Below, in pieces: positions 11,935 to 61,625 of a stretch of 64,000 nt of DNA. The translations under genes were made by a program, and so were the position numbers. Under the pieces are notes generated by a model that was given only the letters and a program-made list of their open reading frames with translations, made no database searches and was not told the origin of the DNA. Origin of the DNA: Mytilus californianus. Taxonomy: Eukaryota. The stretch's first letter is position 1; each line of letters starts with the position of its first letter. Location of the stretch: positions 4,836,001 to 4,900,000 of the forward strand of contig NW_026262668.1 in the NCBI RefSeq assembly GCF_021869535.1, given 5' to 3'.

Positions 11935-12088
11935 GAAAACTAGGACCTGAGTTGCTGAAGATTAACATGACATGGGAAAACGCTTATGAATACTGTGTAA
12001 CAAGAGATCAACGGTTGCTATATTCTTTTAATGAATTAGAAGATCAATTGGTATTTACTGCTTTTGCATCAGGAATGTCGGGTATTAG
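11935..12088 (+). CDS. Gene 1 exon: CTLD1 N-terminal half
   Basis: Acceptor tttgtgtttctaatag|GA; donor AG|gtacta; 154 nt, phase 1 to 2. GKLGPELLKINMTWENAYEYCVTRDQRLLYSFNELEDQLVFTAFASGMSGI(S) contains the CTLD TW-x-x-A-x-x-x-C motif. Confidence 0.85.
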
Positions 12089-29400: not shown

Positions 29401-32400
29401 ATCCCCTCTATCTGGTAAATGACGTCATAAAGGCGCGCATAATTGACGAACTTTTCCGGTGAAGGACATAACTCGAAATTGGTCTATTGTAACAGGATAC
29501 TGGAAATAAATTGTATTTGAATTAAGAAAAAAAGAAAAGAAAAACACAAAAAACGTACAGATGTATGTATAATTAAATTACTTAGAATGATACAATGAAG
29601 TATAAAATGAGGTGTGGAGTATACGTCAATGACATATCACCACATCGACAACAATAATGAAAAGAAATCTAAAAGGCAACATACAGTTTTCAACAATAGA
29701 TATGTGTCAATTCAATATGTCAAGCCTTAATGAGATATGAGTTTTCAAAAGGGATTTGAAAGTTTCAAGTTGACAAACTGTATTGATAATTGTAGAGCCC
29801 ATCATTGAATATGGTGAGTCGACAACACACGAGGTAGAAAAAGAAGATAATGACAAAACACAACACACCCTTTCCTACCGACAAGGTATATATATATTAA
29901 AAAGAGGATGTAGTAACAGTTGATAACCTCCTCAATGAGTTGCTATTGCATTGATGTTTACACCTATACCCTCATATGCTACTTTTTTCAAATCATCTGA
30001 TATTAATTCCGGTGGTAAAGTGGTTTCATAGTTGCCAAAGCGTCAGATTATTTAGTATACCTCTGTTGTCAATACATAAACACCTGTCTTGTTGCATGAA
30101 TATATCTCGTTCCTGTATTGTTCTTTCATTTTTTTTATTTTCTATTTTCTTTTTGACATATAGAGGAAAATATTTGTTTGTGGTATACTTATTTTCGTGG
30201 AATACGTTTTTATCTTCAACCACGACGTTTTGCACTTACCGAAATGAATATTTTCCATTAAGTCCGAATGTGTTAATCCTTAAACCATTAACCCAAAATC
30301 CAAACAATAAATGCTGTTTTCACAAACATTGATTTCAAGGTCTTTAATGTATAAATAGACGAAACACGCGTCTGGCGTACTAACTTAAGAATGGTATCTT
30401 TGATGAGTGTTTTCGGTATCTGACATGCTTTTGTACTTGGCAACAAAGAAAAAGGCACATGACAGAGAGCATCGGTGACTTTGGTGTTGTTACAAATGTA
30501 CAGAAGTCAGACACAGAGGACATTTAACACATTAATACCGTATAAACATTTGTATTGAAAAACCACTCTTATTTGAATTGGAAAACAAACCTGTATGCTA
30601 TTATTTTCGGGCGTCGACTTTCATCAAATACGCTCGATACCACAGGACTGGAAGCCCAAAAATATGTAATGTTGTGTATCATAAGAATCAAAAGGGTCGA
30701 AACAGAACAACTGATTGAAAATCGTCCGAGGTTAACTTTGCCTGAGGGAGTTTGAACTTGGGTTTTATGTTAATCCTGAAAAGCGCTTCGGATGCATACA
30801 TTTATAACGTGTTGTTTTCATTTTTTACAGCACGGGGTCGATACCTCTGCTGGTGGACTATCAGTCCCCGATGGTATCATCAGCTCAGTAGTCAGTAATA
30901 AGGTACTGAAATGATTTGCACCAAACCTTTCTAAAATTGTCCGTTTATATATTTTGAAATTATAAAGAAACTAAGGTTTCAACTACCTCAGGCAAAGTTG
31001 AACTTAGATGGATTTGGCTATTTGTTTTATGTTCTTTTGGTCATATAGCTCTTTAACTGTTTCGATTCTTATATATCACTTGCTTTCAAATATTCGGCTT
31101 TGAGCGTTAGAAGGATTTGGCTATTTTTTTAGGTCCTTTTTGGTCATATAGTTCTTCAACTGTTTCGGTTCTTATACATCCTTGGCTTTCAAATATTCGG
31201 CTTTGAGCGTTCCTGATGAAGGTAAAGCCAGAAAAGCGCCTTGGACAATAAGATGTATAACGTGCTGTTTTAATTTTTTTTTCTTTAGCACAATACTATA
31301 ATTTTATTACTAGAAAGTCACGTACATTTAACTCATGCCAATACCAAAAACACCGGTTTCCTGATAGATTGTAGTAAATTATACAAAACATAAGTAAGGG
31401 ATTTTGAAAAAGAACTATAAGTTATTTAACTCCGTGTTACTGTAGAACATTAAGTTGCAAATTATGCAAATTACATTTATGCTATTTAAGAAAATATACT
31501 TTACCTAGAAAGTCTTTTTGCAAAAAAATTCTCTTAAACCTCTTCTATGCACCATCTTGAAATTGCCATGATATATGAGCTTCAGTTCGTGTTTAAGGTC
31601 TCGTCGTGACTTGGAGAAGAACTACAGCAATAAAACCATTGTGTATTTGCTTTTGTTATGTCAAGAACGTGTAGGGATTTTGTGTCATCGATACAAACAC
31701 TTTCTTTTATTTTCATAGATAGTGTCACTCGAGATTGCAAAACCCTAATGTGAGAATACTTTTCCATATCCCATTTACAACTCCTATTGACTACGGGCGA
31801 TTTTATAGCTATTACTTAATTAATCGTGTATATGGGCGTTCACCTGACAAATACCTGTACATTTAAAATTTTGTTCTATTAAGCTTCTGTCTCATTAACG
31901 TTTTCATTAATTCAAACTTACAACTCTTGTTATTAATAGAGGAAAGTTACTTTAAGATTTTAATAACTGACACGTGAAATAGAAAGACTTCGCCGGTCGT
32001 CTATATGATACATGTTATAATAAATAGCATTTTAAAATTCAATAACAAAATATTTGATCAAATATCAAATTAAAATCGATTGATATAGAACAAATCAATT
32101 TTAATCAAATTTGCCAGTTGTTCTGATCTTGAAGCTCTTCGTCTCGTTGCTTAAGATCTTCAAGCAACTATGAATAAATTTATGACAACTAAGATGAAAT
32201 TGCATTCGAAATCATAATAATGCATATTATTTTTACCCACATTTGAAAGCTCAATCACTTGGACAAACCAGTAGGGATAGAACTATCACTACAACGGAAC
32301 TTACCGCTACAGTCAACAAAACAGAAGCAGGTTCGATTATATTTAATTATACTCATACATACATCTTGCATTGTTTCCATCTAGTATATATACAAATGTC

Positions 32401-35400
32401 TAGTTCTAAATATTCTAACAGCTTTTGATATCATGAGAGAAAACAACATTAATAGTTGAACCTTTTTTTTACCATACAAAATTATACAAAAATACCCAAT
32501 CAATGTAAGGATAAGATTGTTGAAGTTGACAAAGTTAAGTATTCCTTAAGCGAATCTCCGGCATGTCTAATTGGGACTTTTACTTGTGCTACTGGAGCTT
32601 AAACGGCAACAATATCTTTAAAGAACCAATTGTTCTAAAAAAATCTAAAACATTTAAAACGTTGCAGAGCATTAACACAAATTTAACCTAAAAGAAGATA
32701 ATAGATTAAGGTCCCATTCGGCCTTCAACAATAGACAAGTGCCTTTTCAATAAATGAGTAGAGTTAATTACGGAATAAGTAAACAGAGACTACCAAACAT
32801 TTCTTTCGAAACCAAATACCGAAAAGTAACAACGAGAACCTCTAAACAGGTATTTTACTAGGGATTTGTGGTACATCTAGATTTCGAGATCTCAAACCTC
32901 AAGAAATAGCAGTATCAAAATCAGTCCTGTCACAACAACAATTTATAGCGTTATCCATCAGAGTCCAACAGAATGCAGATGTTAAAATACAATACATGTC
33001 ACCTTACAGAATTGAACAATGAGTCAGACCAATACCGAGTAGTGAACTATGAAACGTTAATATACATATACATTTTAATAAAGCCACTCATTTCGAAGAT
33101 GTAAACTTTGATAATAAAAACGATTGGTAATTAGTTTCTGTCTTTCATAGAAAAATATGAACTGTATATCAATTGTCAATTTTTGAAATATCAACCAACC
33201 TGCATGATGCATATTTAATATTTCTCTATAGGACAATTACTAACAATCTATATGGGATTGTTAAGTGCAATATCAAGTGTCATTGTACTGTACACAGGGG
33301 TGAAGATAATACAAGAATTTCGAAATCTGATATTACTTATGGCTGACGTATGTATATGTATAGTTAATATTTATATACTACGCTCCACATCCGCCAATGA
33401 CTGACATATTATGGTACATTTTGTCAGTCTGTCCATTCGCCTTCAATTGTCTTGTAATAATCCAAGTATGCTTTAGGAGTCTTTTCAAACCTTATACATA
33501 ATACTTGCATCGACTCCCTTTTGGAAAATATTTCGTTCTATAGTTATTGGACGAGCTACATTTTAAGCTTGTATCTTCGTAGACCAATTTTGCTTTGTCA
33601 AATCATTGTGCATTTTTTCCCATAAATTATGTTTTGTTTTACATTGACATGAAAGACAAGCTATACTGATTTTACGTTTTTATGTTATATTAGGTATTTA
33701 CAAGATTGTCACATGATGTTTGGTTTCACACAGACAAACTCCTTTCGATTTTGACGATTTTGTAAATTGAATTTAAATGATCATTCTATAAATTAACCTC
33801 CCTACTAACATGGTGATATATCGATATGAAAATTTAAAAATCGACTACGATGAGAAAAATACACCACACACTGTTAGATTGGATACAGGAAGAGTTAAAT
33901 ATCTCCAACGATGGGAACAAAATGACTCTTCGATGAAATAGAATTATGGTAAAACAACAAGACAATTTCAAAACTTAAATCATAGAAAAAAATTAAAAAT
34001 TGGTACCATGAACCCCGCCATATAGTTCAAATAATGTCAGGTACCATGAAAGCGTAATGATTTTCTTCTGCATTAAATAATCCATTGAATAAGTCATTAA
34101 CAATAAAAGGAGACATGATCGTGGCAACTTCACTAAAAATAATCGTATTTATTTGTTCAACTGGTATCTGGGTTACCCGAACAAAGCTATGATGGTGTAC
34201 GAGAACAATACAAAACAAATTAGACACCACAGAAGAGAACGAATAAACCATGGGCAATCGATTTGAAACCTAAAACTTTATCAACCAACGGAATAAATGA
34301 AAAACAACTGTCATATTCCTGACTTGGTACAAGCATTTTCAGAATAAAACATAATTCGAAGAATCATAGACAACATTATGACAAAATATACCCAACGAAA
34401 CAAAACTCCGAACACTTTTACCAGGTTGACCTACAAAAGCCCAACCATAAACTGGGGCTGAACTCGGTGTTCCAGACTAGAAGAGTTAGCTCCAATGGTA
34501 ACACACATCGTGCCACTCATGTGGAAATGCGTTGACCAGTCATCATTAGGCATAATACAGTAGCGACAACAGCGGATTGCTAAATGACTCTATCTCGTCT
34601 ATCATTACGACATTACAAAATTGATAAAATTGCGAGTGATGTGAATGGTCTTACCCTAAAGTTTAAATGAATGTGAAGCTTTAAAAGGAAAACGTGGTTT
34701 GACTATGGCAAAAAAAAGAGACTGTTTCCATTAGACAAAACACAAAAATGAAATTACAATACAAAACACAAAAAAGGAATTAATATACACATCATTAAGG
34801 CAAATTAATGAAATTAGGGGTAAATCCAGCTGCTTCGGAGGGATAAGCAGTTCATGCTCCACTTCTGACACCCGTTAATCACGGAACATATCCGTGGTAA
34901 TCTGGGACATGATTTTCCATAACAGTCAACCAAATCATAATGCCATCCTTGTGGACATGTTTGTTTTTTGTCGTTTTCTCTTTTTTCAGTTTTTTGTAAG
35001 ACACATGAGTTTTGAATGTTTCCTAGGTATTTCTTGCCTTTTTTGTTACAGCTGATGAATAGTTTTAGAATTCTATAAATTTGAAACTGATGTTGTTGCA
35101 GGTTAAGATAAACTTTTTCTTTAACTGACTACATATCCACATGCTCGTTAAAAAATAGTCTCATTGAGACGTATGACTTATACTTTCTGTCCAGGAATTG
35201 ATGGAATATCAATATTTAAAAATGCTGTGTCTGTTTTAATCTCCGGCAAAAGTACAATGTAACAAAATTAACACAGTTGAGATGAAATTATAATAATGCA
35301 CTTTCTTGAATTTCCTTTATAGATTATTTTTCAAACTCTATTTCTTGATCGACTACTACTGTGATTTTATTCGTGGAATACCAATTATCGTGGTTTTTGT

Positions 35401-36689
35401 GATGACTTTATCCAGAATTTAAGTGTCCAACGAAATATAACAACTGTTGTACAAGACATGGAAATATCCCCATATAGGTTTGACTACATGGTTTCGGGCA
35501 TTTAATCTAGAGAATACATCGAATATCAGCAAACGCACTATGAACTACATATGCAACTAGACAGGATTTTACCCATTTAATCTTTAAAACTATTTACTGT
35601 ACAACTTTTAAATTTGTATTCTCATGAAAAATTAGTTTTGTTCAAATAAAGTCAGACCTCAGGTGATGATATGCGACGATGACGTGTTCATTGTTTCTTC
35701 TCATCATTCTCATACGAAAACAAATCATATTGGGCTTTTTTTTTTATTTCCTAAAAATTAATTCTACAATTCGAAGTAAATTTGTAGCATTTTTTATGTT
35801 ACCTTTTTTTTAAGAGACATGTTTATCGCCCACTTAACACCCTTGATGTTTGTTAATCTGTTGATCATTCGATCTCGGGTTAATTAGTGTCTTATGATGA
35901 CACGTGTGCAACAATCAAAATGTTTACTTTGCAATTGCCTTCAATCGAGACAATTTATAAGCATAGGTGACTAAACCTATTTCCAAAAGCAATTATTTAT
36001 TTACAAATTTGATGAATATTGTCAGTAATGAAAGAAGAAGAAGTGAAAATTGACACATTATTTTACAATATCCTACAAAACATTATAAAACAGCATATGA
36101 TTACTTTAAAAAATCTTCGTTTCTTATTTTTTTCCTTAGAAAACTAGAATCCACGAATTTAAGAACCCACGAATAAAAGTACTTTCACAGTATATCTAAG
36201 TTTTAAAAAAAAATCAAAAATCGGTTTTGGTGTTGATCTATCAACGATTAGGGAAAGTACTGAAGATACAATGTCTGTTAAAACAAATGTATACATCTGT
36301 TACTTTCAAATGGAATTTGATGCGACTGTCATACAAGTGAGAGGTTTAGCTAGCTATAAAACCAGGTTCAATCCACCATTTTCTACATAAGAAAATGCCG
36401 GTACCAAGTCAGGAATATGACAGTTGTTATCAATTCGTTTGATGTGTTTGAACTTTTGATTTTGCCATTTGATTGGGGACTTTCCTTTTTGAATTTTCCT
36501 CGGAGTTCAGTTTTTTTGTGATTTTACTTTTTTCTGTTACAGGGGAATATAACGAAGAAAGAAGTTGAAAAACATATGTATGATAAAATTATAATTCAAA
36601 TGGTAGAAATGAATGATGATTGTGTATTCACTAAAGGAGAACATACTAGAAACATTCCACCCATTAATTACACAGATATTATTGAATAA
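11935..36689 (+). CDS. Gene 1 (spliced, 5'-incomplete): predicted type I membrane receptor, CTLD-CTLD-PAN/apple-stalk-TM-cytoplasmic tail with ITIM-like motif
   Basis: Manual join(11935-12088,17597-17823,18715-18868,21278-21459,22757-23005,24703-24795,29796-29885,32250-32330,33232-33347,36543-36689). All introns are GT-AG, all phases are compatible (start phase 1, then 2,1,2,1,1,1,1,1,0), and there is no internal stop: 1493 nt, about 497 aa. The last five exon types have homologues in gene 2. Confidence 0.85.
12488..15416. mobile_element. Non-autonomous DNA transposon (~2.9 kb) with ~154-bp terminal inverted repeats, in a gene 1 intron
   Basis: 12488-12641 and 15263-15416 are reverse complements with only a few mismatches (TAGAATCATGTGCA...). 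The termini are TA, and there is no coding remnant inside. Confidence 0.9.
17597..17823 (+). CDS. Gene 1 exon: CTLD1 C-terminal half
   Basis: Acceptor tttttactgcaacaag|T; donor CAG|gtaatt; 227 nt, phase 2 to 1. EITFWTIHRVTHEIPKRTRFYTNFPVGVGNNPNNLTSLSCVYCVLEVLVMMIGWEADNCEMVHHILCDDSEMWNA has FW, YTNF, NPNN, C, W-x-x-x-x-C and ILC. It is missed by the ORF track. Confidence 0.88.
18715..18868 (+). CDS. Gene 1 exon: CTLD2 N-terminal half
   Basis: Acceptor ttcctatattgaag|AT; donor GG|gtaaaa; 154 nt, phase 1 to 2, the same size and phases as 11935-12088. DSYEITLYEEKVVWSEAKKYCEYTDSALIVIDLRFNFYNIFGASWLALNLTG. Confidence 0.85.
19190..19885 (+). mobile_element. Probable Helentron-associated (HINE-like) non-autonomous element remnant
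   Basis: A ggcggcggcg microsatellite near the 5' end and repeated degenerate cores (tgaccttgacc; gatactataagcaataggt..tatatggaatgattgt x3) resemble bivalve HINE-type repeats. This is recognition only, with no database match. Confidence 0.45.
21020..21108 (+). repeat. 3' tail of a SINE/LINE family ending in (CAAT)n
   Basis: gaatatttgccactggacgtgaagcaacaatcaatcaatc... A related end (gaactatttgccacttgcgctaagc..caacaataaatc) terminates the 1965-2375 repeat. Confidence 0.5.
21278..21459 (+). CDS. Gene 1 exon: CTLD2 C-terminal half
   Basis: Acceptor tattttgcag|G; donor CAG|gttgtt; 182 nt, phase 2 to 1. VITFWSEAIDARYGGSSFISDGTLCVYGKTQLSRDMVATLQSSTESCKNPLHGFMCAKQT. ITFW and CVY are shared with CTLD1, and it ends in FMC. 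Confidence 0.85.
22757..23005 (+). CDS. Gene 1 exon: PAN/apple domain
   Basis: Acceptor gtatgttttccag|AA; donor G|gtatgg; 249 nt, phase 1-1. EKNPFIEMRNQIISNQLVTNNSIQRSVVECQEQCIDLKIYGLSCVGFNFNRTSKECVLLKTSELDYAFAMAEGISAYLPIPAK shows the C-x3-C...C-x-G-F-N-F-N...C pattern typical of 4-Cys PAN modules. Confidence 0.9.
23900..24270 (-). ncRNA. Decayed R1 retrozyme-like copy with a 21-bp x3 internal tandem
   Basis: The minus strand reads gagttcTTGATGAatttaaatccaGAAAaatgcttcggacgca (23936-23980). The body is colinear with 30830-31200, and accttacctgaggaagtggaa x3 lies at 24069-24131. Confidence 0.5.
24703..24795 (+). CDS. Gene 1 exon: stalk 1
   Basis: Acceptor ttttttcatttgcag|TG; donor AAG|gtattt; 93 nt, phase 1-1. 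VTIGEYKPIIESDVSTDRDIGNHANDKIDRQ; TIGEYKPI is identical in gene 2 exon 52145-52243. Confidence 0.85.
26349..26404. repeat. (GA)28 microsatellite
   Basis: Perfect GA run. A shorter interrupted (GA)n lies at ~37099-37133. Confidence 0.98.
26600..28620 (+). mobile_element. Decayed L1/Tx1-like non-LTR retrotransposon ORF2 (RT to C-terminal Cys/His knuckle)
   Basis: Frameshifted motifs: DYKIIAKILS..LKDVLP..HPEQKGFVKGRNISEANRLIQEII; VFLDQLKTFDQIEW; ISLFADGTLLL; SGARINYDNT; LIWDNKVKQI..GG..MINI; FCKIPLETKNHLFYNC. Confidence 0.8.
29796..29885 (+). CDS. Gene 1 exon (candidate): stalk 2, duplicate of stalk 1
   Basis: Acceptor gataattgtag|AG (weak pyrimidine tract); donor AAG|gtatat; 90 nt, phase 1-1, open. 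EPIIEYGESTTHEVEKEDNDKTQHTLSYRQ resembles stalk 1 at both ends (PIIE...RQ). It could be a skipped or pseudo-exon. Confidence 0.55.
30772..31275 (+). ncRNA. Retrozyme-like unit (family R1) bounded by hammerhead-like motifs
   Basis: 3' half motif GAAAagcgcttcggatgca at 30778, and full core CTGATGA(31213-31219)-aggtaaagcca-GAAA(31231-31234). Spacing is 453 bp, or 350 bp after removing a 103-bp internal duplication (31011 vs 31114). Confidence 0.55.
32250..32330 (+). CDS. Gene 1 exon: Thr-rich juxtamembrane stalk
   Basis: Acceptor acatttgaaag|CT; donor CAG|gttcga; 81 nt, phase 1-1. AQSLGQTSRDRTITTTELTATVNKTEA; the acceptor context matches gene 2 exon 49012-49077. Confidence 0.8.
33232..33347 (+). 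CDS. Gene 1 exon: transmembrane helix plus juxtamembrane segment
   Basis: Acceptor tttctctatag|GA; donor GAC|gtatgt; 116 nt, phase 1 to 0. GQLLTIYMGLLSAISSVIVLYTGVKIIQEFRNLILLMAD; same length as, and homologous to, gene 2 exon 44516-44631. Confidence 0.9.
35357..36192. mobile_element. TA-terminated MITE-like element
   Basis: tactgtga (35357-35364) / tcacagta (36185-36192), plus subterminal ttttattcgtgg (35365-35376) / ccacgaataaaa (36167-36178). Confidence 0.65.
36304..36532 (+). mobile_element. 5'-truncated retroposed repeat (family B) with 8-bp target-site duplication tctgttac
   Basis: tctgttac occurs at 36296-36303 and 36533-36540, and the insert ends in a T-rich tract. Related copies lie at about 11100-11330(-), 12150-12280, 34270-34350(-), 42830-43060, 55740-55930(-) and 61460-61552(-). 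Confidence 0.8.
36543..36689 (+). CDS. Gene 1 terminal exon: cytoplasmic tail with YDKI and ITIM-like INYTDI
   Basis: Acceptor tttttctgttacag|GGG; 147 nt to TAA. GNITKKEVEKHMYDKIIIQMVEMNDDCVFTKGEHTRNIPPINYTDIIE*. It aligns without gaps to gene 2 exon 41934-42080 (18/48 aa identical, stop in the same position). Confidence 0.85.
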   Translation, partial: GNITKKEVEKHMYDKIIIQMVEMNDDCVFTKGEHTRNIPPINYTDIIE

Positions 36690-37097
36690 GTTACCAACAA
36701 AAGACAAAGATTGATACACATTGCTAGCATAGAGACGTCTATATGTAAGGACTTTGCAGATGTTATTGTGATTGTGATACTGTTCTGATCACATGATTGT
36801 CATATTCGATTTAATTTTGTTCGTTGTTAAATTTAGAACTATTATTTTTTATTCGGTGCCATTTGAATGATATTGGATTTTTGCAGATATCTAAGAATTA
36901 AACAAAGTGTAAAACTACAAAGTTAGAAAAAGCAACATAATAGGCAGTAAGAGGTGACCGTTGCATATATGTTGTGTTGATTACTGACATTCTACCTCAT
37001 AAGTCTGTTGGAGGAGTTATTTGTGCAAGGATAACATACCTGTTAAACCAGATCTGGCGTCCTCACGTTTTGCTATTTTATCCTACACTTTTTACTT

Positions 37098-37134
<37 letters not shown>

Positions 37135-37236
37135 TCTGTTGTGATACCACTTGTTCGTCTTTTCCTTTTTCTATTTTTTGATTTACACTATGGCGTTATC
37201 AGTTTTTCTTCGACTTATTCACACATTTTATTCATT

Positions 37237-37660
37237 GATACCAGGATTAAAATTGTGTACGCCAAACGCGTGTTTCGCCTATAAATTAGTGATGACACTC
37301 GAAACAAAAAAAAATTAAATGGTTAAATATAGTACGAAGTTTAAGAGCACTGAGGGGCCCACATTCTGAAAATATTTGGAAAATACAGCTATGGTGATAT
37401 ATTTCTTGGGTGGAAAATCCTTCGTATTTCGAAACATTCGAACTTTTGTAAACAGTGTATTTATAAGTATGACTATGTCAAAAATAATTCATGTCAACAC
37501 AGAAGTCCCGACTACTAGACTGGTGACACCCTTGGGATGAAACACACAGCAGCAGTAGCATCAACAGTTGTTGTAAATAAACTCATCATAGATACCAGGC
37601 TAAATACTTGGTACAAAAGACGTGCATTTTGTCTACAAAAGACTCATCGTTGACGCTTGA
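37237..37660 (-). ncRNA. Retrozyme-like unit (family R2), decayed, with two hammerhead-like remnants 354 bp apart
   Basis: gataccagg repeats at 37237 and 37591. The minus strand reads gcgtcaacgatgagtcttttgtagacaaaatgcacgtc and ggcGAAAcacgcgtttggcGTAc, which are mutated versions of a CTGATGA-gtc..gac-GAAA-stem III-GTA core. Confidence 0.5.
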
Positions 37661-38636
37661 AACAAAAAAAAAGCAAAAAAGATAAAATAAAGTACCAAGT
37701 TGAAGAGAAATGTGTATTGAAACGATAAAAGCAGAACAAAAAGTGGAGTCGTCAAATATCAATATCTGTACTGATATAACTCCCTGAAATATGTACCCCT
37801 TTCATGTCAAACGCAAGTACAGCTTGACCATTTTTAATCATGAATTGTACGTTATATTGATTTTGGTTTATGATAAAACCTAGAATAAGGCATTTATTTA
37901 AAAAAAAAAAAAGAAATAAAAGTATAATGGAAGCAAGAAAAAAACATAAATAAAAAATGAGAGAGAGAACCACTGCCAAAGGAAAAAATAAGAAAATAAA
38001 TATAGCAGTTCAAAAAGCAGTTTTGCATGATTTTTCTATCGCCATCTAACTGCAGCAATGTAGCACTCCTATGTGCACATCAGAAACCCAAATAGGTTCA
38101 CATTGTTACCCAGCAAAGATACAACGTTAGCATAACATTATGGTGATGTTATATTTATTTTACGTTTTCATGTAACGTTAAAATAACATTAGTAAAACGT
38201 TAAACATAAACGTAATTTAGCAATCCATCTTTAGCGTTACATTTTTATGTTTACTTGAACGTTATGATTATTACATTACATTTTTATGTTAAGTTGAACG
38301 CTATGATTATTACGTTTCATGTTTTATTTATACTTAGTAAATGTAACGTTATGATATTCACGTTTCTCTAATTCTTCGTCAATTTATCCCTTTCTGCACC
38401 CATTGTATAAAAAAAATTTAATCAACGTGTGGTTCATTCGATCTCGGTTCTTCATTGGTTAAAATCCGATTATGACGTCGAATTTTCTTGCTTTCCTCTG
38501 AATTTCCTATTGTGACGGCATGAAAAACGGCGACCATGCCTGATGACGTCACATAGAAAGAACACATCTTTTTGCAGATCATTCGAAAAGAAGGACTAAA
38601 TTTGCCTGCGTATTGTTTGAAAATCATTAGAGAAAC

Positions 38637-38797
38637 AGATTCCACCACCGAATCTCGTGTAATACGATATTTATCCACTCTCGACAGTTAAATTTTAAAT
38701 ATTTAAAACGCTCGGCGAGCCTTGCGTTTTAAATTTGAAAATTTAACTGTCTCGAGTGGATAAATATCGTATCACACTCGATGCAGTAGTAGAATCT
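38637..38797. mobile_element. Short near-perfect palindromic (hairpin) MITE
   Basis: agattc..gtgtaatacgatatttatccactctcgacagttaaattt...aaatttaactgtctcgagtggataaatatcgtatcacac..gaatct folds back on itself over ~75 bp per arm. Confidence 0.75.
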
Positions 38798-41700
38798 ATA
38801 TTTATCTTTCAACGAATTTCAACGTAAAACTTATACTATAGTTCGACGTCCGAACTACGTTATTGAAAGACATTACTTTTAAACATGTATTTAATGTAAT
38901 ATCGACGTAAATATTAGACGTTTGATTACTAACCATGCCTTTGCCGGAATGTGACGTCGTCATAAATTTTCAAAAAGAGAATAAGATTATATTACATTAC
39001 AAGGAGTAGACAATGGACAACTCTTTTTTTTATGTCTGAACAACTCTGAATTATTTTCCAAAAACAAAAAGAATGTTATCAGTAAGTAAAACTAATTCAT
39101 TCCGTCATTTGTTTGAGTAGAAAATCATACGACCTGTATTAACATGAATTGCTTTGAAAATGTCAATGCATAACTGCAATTAAATTTGGACTATCACTGA
39201 ATATAGTTTTATTTTATGTCGCTTATTCTGAAATTCAATATCTCGATATTTTTTTATACCATTTTTAATTTGAAATTTATGCATCAATATTCAGATTTCA
39301 AATTATAAAAAGAGGGTTTTTGGTATTACAGTTTCGTATATTTTTTCTACATTTACAATGAGTTACCTGTTATTTGTACAATAATTGGCAAATATAGGAC
39401 AAATTGTGACACATGTCATTAATGGAATATGTTCTGGAAATCATACCACGAGAATGAGTGGCTAAGAGTTTTATCGATTATAATTGTTGATTTTTTAATA
39501 GAAAATTATATTCACTTTGATGTTTGAACGTGATGTACTCAAATAAATATTATGGTTAACTCACGATGACATGTTACATCTGCGAGCTCTGCGGTTTACA
39601 GTCTAGAAGACGGTTGCATAGAGAACTACCACTACCAATTATCTTACAAGTGAGGTTATCTAATTGAGAACACATTAAAAAAAACCCAGTTAATACACTT
39701 TTATGCATTAAAAGAGAGGCGAAAGATACCAGAGGGACATTCAAACTGATAAGTCGAAAATAAACTGACAACGTCATGGCTAAAAAAGAAAAAGACCAAC
39801 AGACAAACAATATTTCACTAAACACAACATAGAAAACTAAAGACTAAGCAACACGAACCCCACCAAAAACTGGGGGTTATCTCAGGTGCTCCCGAAGGGT
39901 AAGCAGATCCTGCTCTGCTCATGTTCTATAAACGTATTATCAAGGATTTGAAACGGATTAACAAGACAGGGGTGCCAAAGATACTATTTAGGCTTAGAAG
40001 TGTGTACATACGACTCATACCACCCATGTATGATTTGTATGCAACTTCTGTCAAAATTGTTCGTAGAAATTTCATATGCTTATTTCGGATCAGATGAAAA
40101 AAAGATTTTAATATAACAAATATCGCAGTTTTTTATTTATAGTTTGAGAATATCTCCTTGGCATCTTTTTTTACTTTTTGACACAGATAACTGCATAAAT
40201 CTAATCAAAAGCATGAACAAAAAACCCCAAATAAAACAGATAAACTATAAAAATTGACCAATTACCACATTGAACGGATTCATATATTGATATTATTAAG
40301 TTAAGTTAAGACAGTATTACAATTCATGCAAATCCTTATCTTTTATTGGCTGAAATCCGAATCATTATGATTCCGTTATATCCTTTCAATTCGTTTGAAA
40401 ACCACATATTCCCTACGTTGGGAACTCAGGAGTATACAATTATCAACTTGGCCTAGAAAACATAAAAGTAAGAAGATGTGGTATGATTGCCAATAAAACA
40501 AATATCTTGCAAAGTTAAAATGAAGTATGGTAAGCAATAAAGGCTACCGAACGGCCTCCAGCAATGAGAAAATCCATACCGTATAATCGGCAAGAAAAGG
40601 CAACAACGTGAAATTTGTAAAGCGTTTCAAATGAAAAAACTAACTGCCTAATTATAACAAACAAATTTACTAAAACAAAAATGACAGACAGGAGCCATTG
40701 TCAGACAATGAACTACTGGTCTCTGGTGAAAAGTTGTCTCATTAACAATAATACGACATCTTCTAATTTTCATATTAACATAACAACAATAGACTCAAAG
40801 AATCGATATAAGAGTACTCGCAGTTACTGACAGCTAGTTCAAAGTCAATAACAACTAATGAATAAATCTAATCTCCCAGCTTAATGTATCAATCAGTACA
40901 CATCTAACGGATTTATTGTAACGACGTCATAAACAGATTTAGAAGCCCATGACCTTGTGCAATGCCAAAAAATATATTAACAGTATCGACATGATGTAGA
41001 ATCATGAATTGTCATAACTGTACATATATAGCAATATATATTTAATTATGTTTTGAATTGTTTTGCATTGTTTGTGAACAATGTACTAACGATGATAAAT
41101 ATTTAAAAAATCGCAAATTTTATTCATTTGAAAAACAAGAAGTTTACGCTATATCTTTAAATAAGAAGAATGGATATAGATATACAATTGTTATCCTAGG
41201 ATATACATGTACGATATCAAATGAAATTTGTTAGATATGTATCGAGTTATCTACCTTGAAATCGATATCTTCAAATGTCAATTTCAGCTAAATGACGTAT
41301 TAAAATTTATTTCACCTGAAATTATATCGAATTGTACTTACAGAAACAAAATGTGAATACCATGAATTTGATGCCGTGTATTTGAAAATTTGTACGAAGT
41401 TAATGCAAGTCACCATCACATTTTAACAGGAAGCACTTCATGCTAAATCTGATAGTCCACACGGATATCCACCTTTCATATTATCATTTGTTATTTCGTC
41501 TAAACAAAAATAGACTTTAATTGTTTATAAGGTGCAGTCAAATTGTTAACTTTCATTTTACCAATGGTAACAATTCCATTACAACATATGCGCAATACAA
41601 CACATAACTTGTCATATGTGAAGCTTGCGGCAATGATAAAAGGAAAACATACGTGAAGGAGTCGATCAAACAAAAAATGAAAACAAGTAATATCAAACAA

Positions 41701-41933
41701 GATATCAGAGATTTACAGGAATGACATACTTTCTATATTCAAAATGATTTCAAGCAATTTTCAATAAAACAATATCTTCATTTGGAAGTAGTTTTTCATT
41801 GCCCCAATGTATCTTTTTATGTGTTGAAATGACATTTGTGATTTTTAAATTTAACCACAATTTAACAATAAACAAACCAATTGTAACTGAAACCACCACA
41901 CTTTGGCAGATACATTGGCAGATACAATGCTAT

Positions 41934-42080
41934 TTAGTTAATATTATCCATGTGACAATTTGGTGGAATGTTTAAAGTGACTACTCTTTCAGTGAGTATT
42001 CTTTCACCATCTTCATCTGACATTTCAATTGTAATTGCATCATTTATCTGCTCTTTAACTTCCTTCCTTGTTATTTTCCC
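41934..42080 (-). CDS. Gene 2 terminal exon: cytoplasmic tail
   Basis: Acceptor attatgttacag|GGG; 147 nt to TAA. GKITRKEVKEQINDAITIEMSDEDGERILTERVVTLNIPPNCHMDNIN*. A stronger-looking alternative acceptor lies 53 nt upstream (exon start 42133). Confidence 0.8.
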   Translation of the reverse strand, partial: GKITRKEVKEQINDAITIEMSDEDGERILTERVVTLNIPPNCHMDNIN

Positions 42081-45000
42081 CTGTAACATAATTATACTTT
42101 TTTTTAAATTGATGTGAATCTTGCCTGTCATCCCTGTAAAATTGAAAAAGTAAAAACAAAATCTGTTCAGTTGCATTACTGTAGTCGATGAACAAAATGA
42201 AGTTTACTTTTGACAAAAATATATCATGGTAACTGAAAATTCTTTGTATATTTTTATGAAGTGATTCCAAATAAATGCATCTCGTGATATCATGATAATA
42301 CTATAACATAGTGTTTTATCCGTACATTTGAAAATGATAGAGTTTTGTTTTATAGTCTGAACCGAAGGAAGGAATACGTTATTTTCATGATGTGTCAATT
42401 AGACAACACGTTCTTAAGCATAATGATGAATGATGGTATACGTCATATAAAAGTATATATTATTCAGTCAGGTTAATTTCAATTAAAGGTAGAGATCATA
42501 GGTCCACTGTTGGTGGATGTATATATCAGTCATATATCGTAGTTAAAGTTATTACAAAACAGATGTTGTAATGGTGTATAATTGCTTTCGATCCAAGACA
42601 TATTCAAGAATATGACATTTCTGAAATCAAATTTATACATTCAAATAGACATTTCATTCTTGCTAATGTGCTTCGTCTATATGCCTTTTAATGTTTCTTC
42701 GTTGACATATGTGTTTGTTTTTATATTGATTAAGATTATGACACAATGTTGACTGCTGTACCCCTATTTTTGAAATTTTTACTTTTTATGTCTGTTTGTT
42801 TTGTTCACACATCGTTGTCAATATGATCGAATTTTATGAGAATGTCATTCTAGTGAGAGGTTTAGCTAGCTATAAAAACAGGTTTAATCCACCATTTTCT
42901 ACATAAGAAAATGTCTGTACTAAATCAGGAATATGACAGTTGTTATCCATTCGTTTGATGTGTTTGAGCTTTTGATTTTGCCATTTGATTAGGGAGTTTC
43001 CGTTTTGAATTTCCTCGGAGTTCGGTTTTTTTGTAATTTGGCTTCTTTTTTTTTTTAAAGTGTTACACTGGTATTTTCTTATAAATTTCCAGCACCATGG
43101 TAAATGTTGTGTATAGAAATTTACCCATCTACAAGGACCGTGGTAATTTGTTATGAAGATTTTAGACTATCTTGTAGCACAGTGTTGAGATTTCGTTTTT
43201 TTTAAAATCATTTCGCCATTTTAGAGCCACCGCTATCAAAAATGTTACCGTCTGTTAAAACTGAGATTATCGACAGCTGTTTTTGTTTTACTTCAACTGA
43301 ATTGTTCTCGTACGACAGAATCACTGTATTATCGGTCCAATATTATTTCCCATTTGATACGATATTCCAGAGCATAGTCTATCATGATTTTCATGAAAGA
43401 TGTTTACTATTTGCAAGAAGCTATTGCAACAAGTGTTCTAATAGGTTAAGTTGAATTAAACCCATTGAAAGTTTTACGAAGGTCATCCAGAATTGATTAT
43501 GAGAACAGGTGTTGTTTGAACCTATGAATTTGTTCACAAATAACCACGCCCATTTGTGTTTTTGTGGCCACCATCTTGACTCTGTTTCTTGTTCAATATC
43601 TATAACCTGATTTTCCAAAATGTTTTACAGTGGAGAAAAAACTACTTACTTACAAATTTTACCGACGGCATCACGAGTTTGTTGATCGTTATGGAATATC
43701 TGTTTGACAAATATGTTCCCATAGACGTAACCAAAATCACGTCCTCTTCTTTGAATATGACCTACCGAATCAGACTTATCCCCGGGTTCGTACTAACATG
43801 AGCTATACAACAGGTACCACATGTGGATTAGGATCTGCTTACCCTTTTGCAGCACCTCAGATCACCCCGGCTTTTGGTTCGGTTCATATTTTCTATGTTG
43901 TATTTGTGTACTGTTGTTCGTCTTGTCCTGTATTTTTTGTTTTTGTTTGCCATGGCATTTTCAGTTTGTTCTCGACTATTAAGTTTGAATGTCTCTTTGG
44001 TATTTTTGCTCATTTTTCATTGTCATACCACCTAGCATCAACTCAGATATCAGTACTGGCTTGTGTTGCAAAATCGTTAATAGAAAAAGTGATACGTAAT
44101 GTTGTCCTTTCGAGGCAACGGCGATTTCCCCTGGTTTTTAGTGGGTTTCGCGTTGCTCGGTATTTAGTTTTCTATATATTTTGTGTTTTGCATAATGTTT
44201 GTCTTTTAGTTGTTTTTCGTTTTTTGCCCTGGCGTTGTCAGTTTGTTTTCGTTTTTTGCCCTGGCGTTGTCAGTTTGTTTTCGTTTTTTGCCCTGGCGTT
44301 GTCAGTTTGTTTTTCGTTTTTTGCCCTGGCGTTGTCAGTTTGTCATACGAATGAGGATTAAGCATTGGGTACAAATTTCGTACATTTTCCTTAAAGATCA
44401 CTCTAGTTATTGTACTGCGCCCCAAAGCGGTTTGACAGACGGACAAACATATCCTATAATATGTCAATCATTGACCCTCGTATATCTTCTATCTATCATG
44501 TATGTATATACTTACATCAGCAAGTGATACTACCATATTTTTAACTTTATTTAATACTGGTGGGGCTTTGTAAATCAGAATACCACATGATACTGCGCTA
44601 ATCAACCCCATGATAATCGTCAATAATCGTCCTATTAGAAACAAGGTAAGTTATAATTTTAGTTTTGATTGCTGATAAAAAATAAATGTTTAGTGTTTCA
44701 AAGTTGACCTTAGTTGGATTTGAGTATTTTTTTAAGGTCAGTTTTATCATATAGCTCTCCGATTTTTATGTTCTTATGCATTATTGTCTTTCAAAAATTT
44801 TGATTGAAGAGTTCTTGGTGAAGGTCAATACAGAAATGCGCTTCGAAATTATGGCATTTAAAATGTGTTGTTTTCATGTGAATAATTCGAAAACAAGTAG
44901 AATGTAGCTTTTGACAGATTCAGCCATATAACATAGTTTGCAAAGACTGTTATAGAAGTTGAGTATCCAGTACAGTGAAGAAAGATTTAATTGGGTTTTT

Positions 45001-48000: not shown

Positions 48001-51000
48001 AGCCTTTTCAAGGGATATCAAAATTTCACGGCCTTTTCTAACCTAAAAAAAATTCACGGCCTTTAGAAATTTTTTTTTTAAAACTAAGGACTCTTTTCAC
48101 GGGGTTTTCATGACCTTGTGATATCTCACAGACATTTCACGGCCTTTTCGTGGACTGTTGTCACAGTAGTGTAGACTGATGGTACCAAGGCCTTTGTAAA
48201 AGAAAACTTTCGAAGTGGTCTGTAACATTTATTTCAATGTTATTCTGCCTGAAATACTAAGAGATACAATTACCGTGTTGATAGCTGTTTGTTTGTTGCG
48301 TTTAGAATGAACATTTGTGACAAGTGTTTTCAAGCATGATGTGTACAGAGAATAGCCATGAGAAAGAAGTGAAAGTGAATATAGCTTTGGTAAAAATAGA
48401 AGACAGTCATGTAAGGATATATATAATGAAGAGTTGGTAATGTATATTGACAATGACCGTGCTTGCATCTATGCCAACAACACATTACAAACAAACACTA
48501 AACTTTTGTCTTTAAAACTGTTTTACAACAGTAACATTCTCTCTGTTACATCTTATGGCTTTGATCAGTTAATACCTTACGTTCGTTTATGTTTCATACG
48601 GACTTTATGAATAGGGGTGCACTCATTACACAAAAACTGCCCCAACAGGGAAGAACGAATGAAATCATCACTACATAATTTTAACCATCAATTAGTTGAC
48701 CGTTACTAGGTGCCGGTGTCTCAAATCACTGGCGATATGTTTCGCGGTCTTAGATCTATAAATACAATTATAGTCGTCTGATCTGCCATTTTACATGTTT
48801 TGTTAATTTGCTACTTCTTGTCGATTTCCAAGATTTTTACATCGGTTAGGTAGTGTCGCCTTTTGTAGACGAAACGATATTCGTGCGTTCAAAATAATAA
48901 GCATGGTACCTTTTATTTACAAATTTGTAGAAATATTTAACAACCGGAAATGTTTGTGCTAGATGGAAGTCATTCTGGTTTTATATAAAATATACCAAAG
49001 CATATTCATACCTGCAGCATTGCCTCCATCTGGCCTAGTTGGTTTAGTTGTAGTAGCTGTCTTTTCAAGTGTTGAAGCTTTAAATGTTCAAAGTATATCA
49101 TTTTCATTACACATGATAAAAGATAAAGGTTGTAATATTAGGATAAAGACAAATCAAATGTGATTTTATATCTATTAGATATTATCTTTATTGTTGTTTA
49201 AATGTTTAACGATGAAACTAACAGGTACACATTGGCAATCAAACATTATAGTCAAAATTGGGCAACAGTAGTTAACCGATGTTCACACATGGGTAATCAA
49301 ACATTATAGTCAAAATTGGGCAACAGTAGTTAACCGATGTTCACACATGGGTAATCAAACATTATAATAGTCAAAATCAGGCAACAGTAGTTAACCGATG
49401 TTCACACATGGGTAATCAAACATTATAGTCAAAATCAGGCAACAGTAGTTAACCGATACTCAAATCTTATAAATCGATAAGAAGAAACAAATCAAGGTAA
49501 CAAACAAAATTGAGGCAATCGCAATGACAATAAATGAGGAAGACCGGATACATAGAAAATCAAAAATCGAACTGACAATGCCATGACAAAAAACGAAAAA
49601 TTACCAAGACGCAAACAATAGAGTACAATATATAACATACAGAACTAAGCACTGAGCAACACGAACCCCACCTCAAACCTAGAGTAATATCAGGTGCTCC
49701 GATAAGGCCGATAATGCTGCGTATATGGCACCCGTCGTGTTATTCATGTAAATACAAACCCGGTGATTAGCCTAATTCGGTAGGTCAAATTTAAGGAAAA
49801 GAGAACGGGATTGTGCTTACAATAAATGGAACATATTCGTTGTTATCTGTGAAAAAGATATTCCAAAACAGTCAATCAATTCGTAATGGGATCCCTTAAA
49901 TTTTCGAAGGGATGATTTCAACTACACCACTTAGACTAAAGTCATCAAACTTATCCGTCTGATATGAAGACATGCACTCAAACATAGACCGACGACATTT
50001 CATGTCTTTAGAAAATGAAGACGAAAAGAAAATCTACACTATTACTTATTAGATAAATCCCTGCTAAAACGCGGGAGATTATGTTTGCTTCAAAATGATC
50101 ATCTTTTACTGCTGTATCAATAAATGCAACCCGCCATGCTCTTCATTTCTAGTAAAAATACGATTTAAGTCACATTAGTGTTACGAGTTCATAGTATGCC
50201 CTCAATATCTATTTCAATATGAGATTTATACATCGGTAATCTATTGTTACCTCTTATTTCAAACCATGCAACAGCATAACCATTTCCATAGGACAAAAGA
50301 CGACGGGGGAATCACTACATAGAGAAGTAAACATTGAGTAACACAAATCTACCTAAAACAGTCGATCAAATCATAGTCTTATTCGTATAATAAATACGCG
50401 ACGACTTCAACTTCACAATTAAGAACCCTTAGTGTAATTTATTCTTCCCGTGTCCTCGTTGTCAATGTCTATTTGTAATACAACATATACAGCATTATGT
50501 ATTGTATTTGTAATACAATTATTATTTTTCCAATATCAAACGCGAGGTTAAACTTATGATGAAATTGAGAATGAAAATGGGGAATATGTCAAAGAGACAA
50601 CAATCCGACCAAAGAGCAGATGAAAATGGACGTCACACTAAACTCCAAATCATATAAATGAACTAAAATTAAAAAAAAAAACATACTAGACTAACAAAGT
50701 AGCATTTTTTAATTCATATAAAAATTACATGCATGAAGTCTGTCTCAATAAAGTTAGACACATTTCAACTGGAAGAAGAGATTATTCCGTTCCTGGTATT
50801 TAAAAAAAAAAAGTCGTCCAAATGTATCCAATATTTTTGAAAATGCTCTCCTCTCACAGTTAACTAAAGACGACGTTTATATTTTAAAAAGAAGTCAAAT
50901 GAAAAGTTCAAACAAGAAACATACTTGGAAAATGTATTGTCAAAATTTCAATCTTTTAGAAGGTTTTGATTTAATCATTACGAATAGTTAAATAGTAAAA

Positions 51001-61446: not shown

Positions 61447-61625
61447 TAGGTAAAATAACTAAAATACCGAGCTCCATGAAAAATTCAAAACGGAAAGTCC
61501 CTTATCGAATGGTAAAATCAAAAAATCAAACACATCAAACGAACGGAAAACAAGAGAAGCAAAAGATACCAAAGGGACATTCAAACTCATAATAATAATA
61601 ATAATAATAAATTCTTTATTTTCAA

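What the first reader, a model, noticed from the sequence alone, without database searches (positions are those of the whole stretch)
33232..44631. Paired-receptor signature: one paralogue has a tail with YDKI and ITIM-like INYTDI, the other lacks both tyrosines
Seen: the two 147-nt terminal exons align without gaps. Gene 1 has ...HMYDKII...PPINYTDIIE* and gene 2 has ...QINDAIT...PPNCHMDNIN*. Each Tyr codon differs by one first-position base (TAT/AAT, TAC/CAC). Established: INYTDI fits the ITIM consensus [ILVS]xYxx[ILV], and vertebrate lectin and Ig receptor families (Ly49, Siglec, KIR, PIR) contain neighbouring paralogues with and without ITIMs. Inference: this may be an invertebrate inhibitory/decoy (or inhibitory/activating) receptor pair. 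Gene 2 has a Lys just after its TM helix (LIYKAPP) but no clear mid-membrane charge, so decoy or non-signalling is more parsimonious than adaptor-coupled activation. The direction of change (loss vs gain) cannot be determined here.
Basis: partly seen in the sequence, partly recalled or inferred. Interest (0 to 1): 0.8.

Follow-up and report, generated by a model that had tools for sequence, protein, structure and literature searches.

The report
Mussel lectin-like receptor pair, tyrosine-gain tail
Two neighbouring mussel genes for lectin-like membrane proteins do differ by two tail tyrosines as described, but both tyrosines are recent changes found only in this one gene copy, so an inhibitory/decoy receptor pair remains an unproven pattern match.

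Summary
Two convergent genes end in homologous 147-nt exons that align without gaps (69% nt, 38% aa). Gene 1 reads HMYDKII and INYTDIIE. Gene 2 reads QINDAIT and NCHMDNIN. The codon pairs are TAT/AAT and TAC/CAC.

- Both genes belong to a family seen only in Mytilus: two C-type-lectin-like domains (below threshold), a PAN/apple domain (above threshold), stalk, TM helix and tail.
- Fourteen other tail copies in this genome all have H at the "ITIM" tyrosine and N/T/S at the other site. These include five dead 3' fragments of gene-1 type.
- Relatives in other Mytilus species carry a tyrosine at one site or the other. Only H or Y ever occupies the second site.
- The tail shows no purifying selection (dN/dS about 1.6, noisy).
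- The ectodomains are only 32-46% identical. Gene 2 has no TM charge and keeps a full tail, so the pair does not look like classical paired receptors.
- The ITIM pattern fits 6-8% of tyrosines by chance.
- One partly read RNA run gave two 3'UTR reads and no junction reads.

First readers flagged similar "paired" or "tyrosine-tail" lectin clusters elsewhere in this genome; those notes are unchecked.

The parts
11935..12088 (+). Gene 1 exon, start of lectin-like domain 1 (MTWENAYEYC...). The signal-peptide exon upstream was not found.
   Evidence: tblastn with P0013, P0016 and P0017. AG/GT sites and phase checked.
17597..17823 (+). Gene 1 exon, end of lectin-like domain 1 (...GWEADNCE..HHILCDD)
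18715..18868 (+). Gene 1 exon, start of lectin-like domain 2 (VVWSEAKKYCEYT...)
   Evidence: The family profile hits the CLEC-2 C-type lectin domain at E = 0.022.
21278..21459 (+). Gene 1 exon, end of lectin-like domain 2 (...CKNPLHGFMCAKQT)
22757..23005 (+). Gene 1 PAN/apple domain exon
   Evidence: Pfam PAN_1, 31 bits against a gathering cut-off of 21.4
24703..24795 (+). Gene 1 stalk-repeat exon (TIGEYKP...)
29796..29885 (+). Candidate second stalk-repeat exon of gene 1. It is 90 nt, phase 1-1, with AG/GT. It could be included or skipped without changing the tail frame.
   Evidence: Weak tblastn hit (E = 0.3). Splice sites read directly. No RNA evidence.
33232..33347 (+). Gene 1 transmembrane and juxtamembrane exon
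36304..36536 (.). High-copy short repeat, about 234 bp, inserted directly in front of gene 1's last acceptor, with CTGTTAC duplicated on both sides. It is absent from all five gene-1-type fragments. Its T-rich end now supplies the polypyrimidine tract.
   Evidence: (very high depth; loose ends at 36309 and 36532/3)
36543..36689 (+). Gene 1 terminal exon (48 codons plus TAA). Tyr13 is TAT at 36579-36581 (YDKI). Tyr43 is TAC at 36669-36671 (INYTDI).
41934..42080 (-). Gene 2 terminal exon. It has Asn13 (AAT, 42044-42042) and His43 (CAC, 41954-41952).
44516..44631 (-). Gene 2 transmembrane and juxtamembrane exon (…GILIYKAPP…)
49010..49081 (-). Gene 2 mucin-like Ser/Thr-rich exon (STLEKTATTTKPT…). 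The bounds are those of the tblastn hit.
52143..52256 (-). Gene 2 stalk-repeat exon. The bounds are those of the tblastn hit.
55077..55340 (-). Gene 2 PAN/apple exon. The three lectin-like-domain exons found for gene 2 lie beyond the window end, at window-equivalent 65475-68577.
   Evidence: Pfam PAN_1, 29.6 bits. Upstream exons found in L031.

Best explanation
Gene 1 and gene 2 are two intact, long-diverged paralogues of a gene family seen only in Mytilus mussels. The encoded proteins are type I membrane proteins. Their layout is two C-type-lectin-like domains, one PAN/apple domain, stalk or mucin repeats, one TM helix and a cytoplasmic part of about 65 aa whose last 48 aa come from one exon.

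The family sits mainly in a cluster at about 4.85-5.27 Mb of the contig. That cluster holds seven gene-2-type genes, one intact gene-1-type gene (gene 1) and five truncated 3' fragments of gene-1 type.

The two tyrosines arose in gene 1 by single-base changes (AAT to TAT, CAC to TAC) after those fragments were copied. They sit on a tail scaffold that already had Ile at -2 and +3, so the His-to-Tyr change alone created the ITIM-like string.

The tail evolves about as fast as neutral sequence, and tyrosines come and go at the same two sites in relatives. The most likely reading is ordinary fast paralogue divergence, not a dedicated inhibitory/decoy pair.

Inferred, not shown: the proteins are cell-surface binding receptors. 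Whatever the tail does probably rests on features shared across the family. These are the basic juxtamembrane stretch, the acidic SDEDGE-RIL cluster in gene-2-type tails, and the C-terminal NIPPxC[H/Y]xDII motif.
For: - Gene models: eight gene 1 exons have AG/GT sites and consistent phases, giving a 439-aa open frame. The eight gene 2 exons found are intact, three of them beyond the window end.
- Domains: PAN_1 scores above threshold in both genes. Lectin_C scores 16.1 bits against a cut-off of 22.6 in relative P0016. The family profile hits the CLEC-2 lectin domain at E = 0.022 over the whole domain, and the HGF PAN domain at E = 0.42.
- Polarity: all 14 other aligned tails in this genome have H at site 43 and N, T or S at site 13.
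- The five gene-1-type fragments all begin at window position 32952. Their TM exon is interrupted or deleted. Their tail exons carry a lost acceptor AG, frameshifting deletions or, in L006, also an in-frame stop. No + strand PAN or lectin-domain exon accompanies them.
- Recurrence: Tyr13 occurs in P0001 and P0014 (M. coruscus) and in P0019 (M. galloprovincialis). Tyr43 occurs in P0016 (M. edulis), whose counterparts here (L007) and in M. coruscus (P0020) have His. Tyr43 also occurs in P0017 and P0022.
- Selection, gene 1 against gene 2: the tail has dS 0.27 and dN 0.44 (ratio 1.59). The other exons give ratios of 0.40-1.05. Gene-2-type tails compared with each other give 0.9-2.9.
- Pattern specificity: the ITIM pattern fits 6-8% of tyrosines by chance.
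Against: - Site 43 shows only H or Y in about 28 tails, so it is constrained in some way.
- Gene 1 gained both tyrosines, and both also fit the YxxPhi sorting pattern. On its branch I count 4-6 amino-acid changes and no clear silent change in the exon. That is compatible with adaptive change.
- The exon is near-identical (10 of 11 sampled words) in five further runs from four samples of the same species. The allele therefore looks common, not a one-off.
- ITIM-dependent signalling has been reported in a bivalve, the oyster CgNCAM1-SHIP2 axis (PMC11841013).
Confidence: 0.65

Rival explanations
1. A newly evolved inhibitory receptor. After tyrosine phosphorylation, INYTDI in gene 1 works as a true ITIM that recruits an SH2 phosphatase. 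The His-bearing gene-2-type neighbours would be the non-signalling counterparts.
For: - The pattern fits, and the motif lies in a predicted cytoplasmic tail 5 residues from the C-terminus.
- The family has members with and without the tyrosine.
- ITIM/SHIP2 signalling is reported in oyster.
- The allele is present in several individuals.
Against: - The tyrosine is unique to one copy and derived.
- Tyr43 in P0016 is not kept in this genome's counterpart or in the M. coruscus one (L007, P0020).
- The other two Tyr43 relatives read NCYFDI and TFYMDI, which do not fit the ITIM pattern.
- The ectodomains of the 'pair' are only 32-46% identical.
- The pattern fits 6-8% of all tyrosines by chance. 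More than 1600 human TM proteins are estimated to carry it (abstract of PMC11460946).
- Expression evidence is almost nil.
Confidence: 0.1
2. A trafficking switch. The two gained tyrosines (YDKI, YTDI) are YxxPhi sorting or endocytosis signals. In gene 1 they would replace the acidic-cluster, dileucine-like signal of gene-2-type tails (SDEDGERIL, which reads MNDDCVF in gene 1). The two proteins would then differ in internalisation or sorting, not in inhibitory signalling.
For: - Both tyrosines fit YxxPhi.
- Tyr13 relatives read YDAF, which is also YxxPhi.
- Gene-2-type tails keep a conserved S-D-E-D acidic run followed by IL or IF, which gene 1 lacks.
- From general knowledge, many endocytic C-type lectin receptors use tyrosine or dileucine signals.
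Against: This too is only a pattern match. YxxPhi fits 9 of 20 tyrosines in gene 1. There is no localisation data, and the tail is weakly constrained.
Confidence: 0.15
3. Gene 1 is on its way out. It is the last intact gene-1-type copy, barely expressed, with a repeat inserted at its final acceptor. The tyrosines would be neutral changes in a gene under relaxed constraint.
For: - All five other gene-1-type copies are dead fragments.
- A 234-bp repeat sits directly in front of the acceptor.
- There are no reads on the TM exon and only two on the 3'UTR among about 10 million reads of one RNA run.
- No gene-1-type protein was found in three other Mytilus proteomes.
- The tail dN/dS is at or above 1.
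Against: - All eight exons found are open with canonical splice sites.
- The other exons have dN/dS of 0.4-0.8 against gene 2.
- Only 6% of one run of unknown tissue was read.
- The repeat supplies a good polypyrimidine tract.
Confidence: 0.1

Closest known systems
Uncharacterised Mytilus 'Apple domain-containing' and 'C-type lectin domain-containing' proteins, for example M. coruscus CAC5421401.1 (P0001) and P0014, M. edulis P0016, M. galloprovincialis VDI12676.1 (P0007) and P0017
   Same: They share the exon-by-exon architecture (lectin-like x2, PAN, stalk/mucin, TM, 48-aa tail) and the same TM-to-tail junction (…LAD|G.IT.KE…). P0014 is 76-88% identical to gene 2 in the ectodomain exons and 80% in the tail.
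   Different: None is of gene-1 type. The best PAN match to gene 1 is 49% identical. None has both tyrosines. No function has been published for the family as far as my searches reached.
Vertebrate paired lectin-like and Ig-like receptors (Ly49, NKG2/CD94, KIR, PIR, Siglec pairs)
   Same: They are clustered paralogues in a rapidly duplicating array. Some members have and some lack a cytoplasmic tyrosine motif that fits the ITIM pattern.
   Different: Ly49 and NKG2 are type II proteins with N-terminal ITIMs. Classical pairs have near-identical ectodomains, and the activating partner has a short tail plus a charged TM residue. Here the ectodomains are 32-46% identical, both tails are full length and homologous, there is no TM charge, and the tyrosine is a single-copy novelty.
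Oyster ITIM-bearing receptor CgNCAM1 (PMC11841013)
   Same: It is a bivalve type I membrane protein with ITIM-pattern tyrosines in its tail. It is reported to bind SHIP2 and to damp inflammatory factors.
   Different: Its ectodomain is Ig/FN3, not lectin-like/PAN. It has experimental support. There is no sequence relationship to this family.
CLEC-2 (CLEC1B) and other C-type lectin-like domains; HGF/plasminogen PAN (apple) domains
   Same: CLEC-2 is the best solved-structure sequence match of the family profile (E = 0.022 across the whole domain). The HGF PAN domain scores E = 0.42. Pfam PAN_1 scores above threshold.
   Different: The lectin-like domains are below Pfam's threshold. Sugar-binding residues were not examined. 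The fold model was too poor to compare.

Membership tests
PAN/apple domain (Pfam PF00024) | Score at or above the curated gathering threshold of 21.4 bits | tested here: met
   Gene 1 exon scores 31.0 bits and gene 2 exon 29.6 bits.
C-type lectin-like domain (Pfam PF00059) | Score at or above the gathering threshold of 22.6 bits, or a confirmed fold | tested here: inconclusive
   The best score is 16.1 bits, spanning model positions 3-100 of 107, in relative P0016. The gene 1 exons alone give no hit. The family profile matches CLEC-2 at E = 0.022 over the full domain. The AlphaFold model had mean pLDDT 35.8 and was unusable.
ITIM-bearing inhibitory receptor | A cytoplasmic [ILVS]xYxx[ILV] motif in a membrane receptor | tested here: met
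   INYTDI is at residues 41-46 of the terminal exon, downstream of the TM helix. The pattern has low specificity.
ITIM-bearing inhibitory receptor | The motif tyrosine is conserved among orthologues and close paralogues | tested here: not met
   It is unique to gene 1 among 16 tails of this genome. The five closest copies have His. No gene-1-type orthologue was found in databases. Tyr43 in M. edulis P0016 is His in this genome's counterpart L007 and in M. coruscus P0020.
ITIM-bearing inhibitory receptor | Tyrosine phosphorylation and recruitment of an SH2 phosphatase (SHP or SHIP) | not testable with these tools
   This needs peptide pull-down or cell assays.
ITIM-bearing inhibitory receptor | Expressed in immune cells, with the motif-bearing exon in the mRNA | tested here: inconclusive
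   In RNA run X6 (6% read) there were 0 reads on the TM exon, 2 reads on the gene-1-specific 3'UTR and no junction reads listed. The tissue is unknown.
Paired (inhibitory/activating or inhibitory/decoy) receptors | Highly similar ectodomains combined with different signalling tails | tested here: not met
   Ectodomain exons are 32-46% identical, no more alike than the tail at 38%.
Paired (inhibitory/activating or inhibitory/decoy) receptors | The counterpart has a charged TM residue for adaptor pairing, or a truncated tail | tested here: not met
   The gene 2 TM segment LLTIIMGLISAVSCGILIY has no charge, and gene 2 keeps the full 48-aa tail exon.
Paired (inhibitory/activating or inhibitory/decoy) receptors | Neighbouring genes in one cluster | tested here: met
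   The two genes are convergent with stop codons 5.2 kb apart. They lie within a cluster of about 0.4 Mb.
YxxPhi tyrosine-based sorting signal | A cytoplasmic Y-x-x-bulky-hydrophobic motif that binds the AP mu subunit | tested here: inconclusive
   YDKI and YTDI fit the pattern. Binding cannot be tested here, and the pattern also fits 9 of 20 tyrosines in the protein.

The most novel reading that the evidence does not exclude
A mussel-specific family of lectin-like/PAN membrane receptors repeatedly toggles His/Tyr and Asn/Tyr at two fixed tail positions. This would generate members that can and cannot be tyrosine-phosphorylated, or internalised. It would be an invertebrate analogue of vertebrate paired receptors, evolved convergently. 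Gene 1 would be the only member carrying both tyrosines.
Probability: 0.1. Interest if true: 0.7.

Novelty: new member of a known kind. Interest (0 to 1): 0.3.

Why it matters
If the tyrosines were functional, this would be a datable birth of an inhibitory or endocytic motif inside a fast-duplicating bivalve receptor cluster. The dead fragment copies preserve the ancestral state, which makes that birth traceable.

As the evidence stands, the case mainly shows that the ITIM pattern is too unspecific to call paired receptors from sequence alone. It also documents an uncharacterised Mytilus-only receptor family (lectin-like x2, PAN, TM) with a conserved tail scaffold that could be worth a targeted expression study.

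Tried and rejected
- Structure: the AlphaFold2 model of relative P0016 with a 21-row family alignment had mean pLDDT 35.8. It was unusable, so no fold search was run.
- Alignment A2 (one full-length row plus gene 1 exon fragments) was badly misaligned and discarded. A1 was used instead.
- The signal-peptide exon of gene 1 was not found. The weak hit at 9538-9645 has no donor site and lies in a repeat-like open frame. A composition scan gave only unsupported candidates, for example 5683-5728.
- Run X1, labelled 'RNA?', covers introns and behaves like DNA, so it is not expression evidence.
- Reads were laid on gene 1 (31000-36950). Gene 2's junction 44516-42080 was therefore not tested with reads.
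- The read laying difference table was truncated (181 rows not shown). The state of the two Tyr codons in runs X5 (organism C) and X1 (organism A) could not be read. Their contigs carry fragment-like letters in the 3'UTR.
- Word shares give only indirect evidence. Shares of 10/11 words in other samples of the same species are compatible with both Tyr codons being present. The 3/11 share in organism A is what a fragment-like or ancestral sequence would give.
- Locus L017 (C165) was a spurious tail hit and was ignored. L007 was misregistered in the dN/dS table, so those rows are ignored.
- Pfam found nothing in the tail, TM or stalk exons.
- No paper found describes this family or any Mytilus ITIM receptor.


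Full report
**Observation**

On the + strand, a TM exon (33232-33347) joins in phase 0 to a 147-nt terminal exon (36543-36689, stop TAA). On the - strand, a homologous TM exon (44631-44516) joins to a homologous 147-nt terminal exon (42080-41934). All four have canonical AG/GT sites.

The terminal exons align without gaps, with 102/147 nt and 18/48 aa identical (tblastn E = 5e-8).

Gene 1 reads ...HMYDKII...PPINYTDIIE*. Gene 2 reads ...QINDAIT...PPNCHMDNIN*. Codon 13 is TAT against AAT, and codon 43 is TAC against CAC. Gene 2's TM helix has no charged residue and is followed by YKAPP.

**What the genes are**

Paralogue comparison and protein-guided searches extend both genes far upstream.

Gene 1 has at least eight exons, from 11935 to 36689, all with AG/GT sites and consistent phases. 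They give a 439-aa open frame. A ninth well-formed candidate stalk exon lies at 29796-29885. The signal-peptide exon was not found.

Gene 2 has intact tail, TM, mucin, stalk and PAN exons inside the window. The three lectin-like-domain exons found for it lie beyond the window end, at window-equivalent 65475-68577.

Domain evidence:
- The PAN/apple domain passes Pfam's threshold in both genes, at 31.0 and 29.6 bits against 21.4.
- The two upstream domains carry the C-type-lectin-like signature (W.EA..YC ... C..P.H..MC) but are below threshold: Lectin_C scores 16.1 bits against 22.6 in relative P0016.
- A family profile matches the CLEC-2 lectin domain at E = 0.022 over the whole domain.
- An AlphaFold model was too poor to use, with mean pLDDT 35.8.

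All database relatives are unnamed or uncharacterised proteins of Mytilus coruscus, M. edulis and M. galloprovincialis. An exhaustive search with gene 1's PAN exon over 1.84 billion cluster representatives gave only nine hits at E up to 0.001. The six I read in full, and all the named relatives, are from Mytilus. The three hits I did not read are P0003, P0006 and P0009. Annotated models in those species use the same TM-to-tail junction (…LAD|G.IT.KE…). That is the only support I have for the junctions beyond splice-site logic.

That fits my recollection of that assembly's size and scaffold number. I did not verify it.

**Cluster structure**

The window is C88:4,836,001-4,900,000. Whole-genome searches with single exons gave the following:
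- Seven gene-2-type genes lie on the - strand between 4.88 and 5.27 Mb. Each has lectin-like, PAN, TM and tail exons.
- On the + strand, only gene 1 has lectin-like and PAN exons.
- Five further + strand tails of gene-1 type (72-73% aa, about 91% nt identity) are fragments.

Homology of the two fragments I fetched to gene 1 starts in both at window position 32952, inside the intron before the TM exon. In one of them the TM exon is split by a 735-bp insertion, and in the other it is deleted. The tail exons of the five fragments carry a lost acceptor AG, frameshifting deletions at codons 4-5, an in-frame stop or a lost stop.

These fragments were therefore copied as truncated pieces. They act as fossils of the gene 1 tail at the time of duplication.

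**Direction of change**

All five fossils, all nine gene-2-type or more distant tails in this genome, and the outlying loci have His at site 43. At site 13 they have Asn, Thr or Ser. Both tyrosines are therefore gains on the gene 1 branch, not losses in gene 2.

The Ile at -2 and the Ile at +3 were already present (INHIDI, ISHIDI). His-to-Tyr alone therefore created the pattern match. Thr at +1 is also derived.

On the gene 1 branch I count four clear amino-acid changes (N13Y, A21V, H43Y, I44T), perhaps six, and no clear silent change. This is too few to test.

**Wider family**

Among twelve database tails:
- Tyr13 (YDAF) occurs in two M. coruscus genes and one M. galloprovincialis protein.
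- Tyr43 occurs in M. edulis P0016 (TFYMDII). This genome's counterpart has SCHMDII and M. coruscus P0020 has NCHMDII.
- Tyr43 also occurs in the M. galloprovincialis/M. edulis pair P0017 and P0022 (NCYFDII).

Only gene 1 has both tyrosines, and only gene 1's version fits the ITIM pattern. Site 43 is only ever H or Y, which points to a requirement for a ring side chain rather than for phosphorylation.

**Selection and chance**

Between gene 1 and gene 2, the tail exon has dS 0.27 and dN 0.44 (ratio 1.59, from 6 silent and 39 replacement differences). This is the highest ratio of all exons; the others give 0.40-1.05. Gene-2-type tails compared with each other give ratios of 0.9-2.9 from very few changes. 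The tail is therefore the least constrained part. With these counts, the data cannot separate relaxed selection from diversifying selection.

The ITIM pattern fits 3 of 20 tyrosines in gene 1, with 1.5 expected, including one in the ectodomain. It fits 11 of 189 tyrosines in twelve relatives. A paper in the library cites an estimate of more than 1600 human TM proteins with the pattern (abstract of PMC11460946).

**Comparison with paired receptors**

The ectodomain exons of the two genes are 32-46% identical. Gene 2 keeps the complete homologous tail and has no TM charge. These are not the features of KIR, Ly49 or PIR-type pairs. Only adjacency and the presence or absence of tyrosine are shared. 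ITIM-type signalling has been reported in a bivalve, for oyster CgNCAM1-SHIP2 (PMC11841013), so the idea is not absurd, nor would it be without precedent.

**Expression and population data**

One read-laying run was allowed, and I used it on 31000-36950.
- In the only true RNA run (X6, same species label, 6% of the run read) there were no reads on the TM exon. Two reads matched the gene-1-specific letters of the 3'UTR. No 33347-36543 junction was listed.
- Run X1, guessed to be RNA, covers introns and is DNA-like.
- The exon's sampled words are held 10/11 in five further runs from four samples and two studies of the same species. They are held 6/11 in organism C and a constant 3/11 in many runs of organism A. 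The gene 1 allele thus seems common in its own species. Its state in other species could not be read.

**A caveat at the acceptor**

A high-copy repeat of about 234 bp (36304-36536) is inserted directly in front of the last acceptor of gene 1. It is flanked by a duplicated CTGTTAC and is absent from all five fossils. Its T-rich end now forms the polypyrimidine tract. Splicing of the tyrosine-bearing exon therefore needs direct proof.

**Verdict**

The sequence observation stands. The paired inhibitory/decoy receptor reading rests on a low-specificity pattern in one derived, unconserved, barely expressed copy.

My probabilities are:
- 0.65: ordinary fast divergence in a Mytilus-specific family of lectin-like/PAN membrane receptors.
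- 0.15: a tyrosine-based sorting switch.
- 0.10: a newly born functional ITIM.
- 0.10: a gene under relaxed constraint.

First readers of this scan flagged similar 'paired' or 'tyrosine-tail' lectin receptor clusters elsewhere in this genome. Those notes are unchecked and are not independent support.

Noticed in passing
window 36304-36536; related copies at 42829-43049, 12147-12278 and 61450-61557: A very high-copy short repeat, with summed contig depths of about 10^5-10^6 in DNA runs and roughly 100x in RNA reads. The copy in gene 1 is a lineage-specific insertion flanked by a duplicated CTGTTAC, right at the last acceptor site. Gene 2's last intron holds an independent copy.
   Followed up: partly
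G000:C88 4.87-5.27 Mb (loci L002-L016, L020-L026): An array of seven gene-2-type genes plus five gene-1-type 3' fragments. Some copies are identical or nearly so (L003=L004, L011~L012, L020=L021=L022), and spacing suggests a recent duplication of about 110 kb (5.00-5.10 to 5.11-5.21 Mb). An assembly duplication was not excluded.
   Followed up: partly
L013 (G000:C88:5014659-5014796, - strand): This gene-2-type tail exon has one extra A just after the acceptor (CAGGGGAAAAATAAC). That shifts the frame, so this copy may be a pseudogene.
   Followed up: no
Relatives P0010, P0011 and P0015 (M. galloprovincialis, M. edulis): Annotated models of family members end just after the TM exon or in other 3' sequence, without the conserved tail exon. 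Tail-less isoforms, or mis-annotations, therefore exist in this family.
   Followed up: no
P0016 (M. edulis, RefSeq model): Its tail ends ...PPTFYMDIIE. TFYMDI fits the switch-motif pattern TxYxx[VI], whereas this genome's counterpart (L007, C88:71.065 Mb) has SCHMDIIE.
   Followed up: partly
G000:C88:25.45 Mb, C88:71.03-71.07 Mb, C143:2.21-2.27 Mb, C154:61.5-61.9 Mb: Further dispersed members or relatives of the family, found as hits to the lectin-like, PAN and tail exons.
   Followed up: no
window 9440-9680 (+): An open frame (…DLDIYI…KIYDKRDDFSFPIVNY…) that looks like part of a repeated mobile-element gene. It produced a false signal-peptide hit.
   Followed up: no
window 29796-29885 (+): A well-formed 90-nt, phase 1-1 exon candidate that would encode a second stalk repeat of gene 1. 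It is not in the minimal model and has no RNA evidence.
   Followed up: partly
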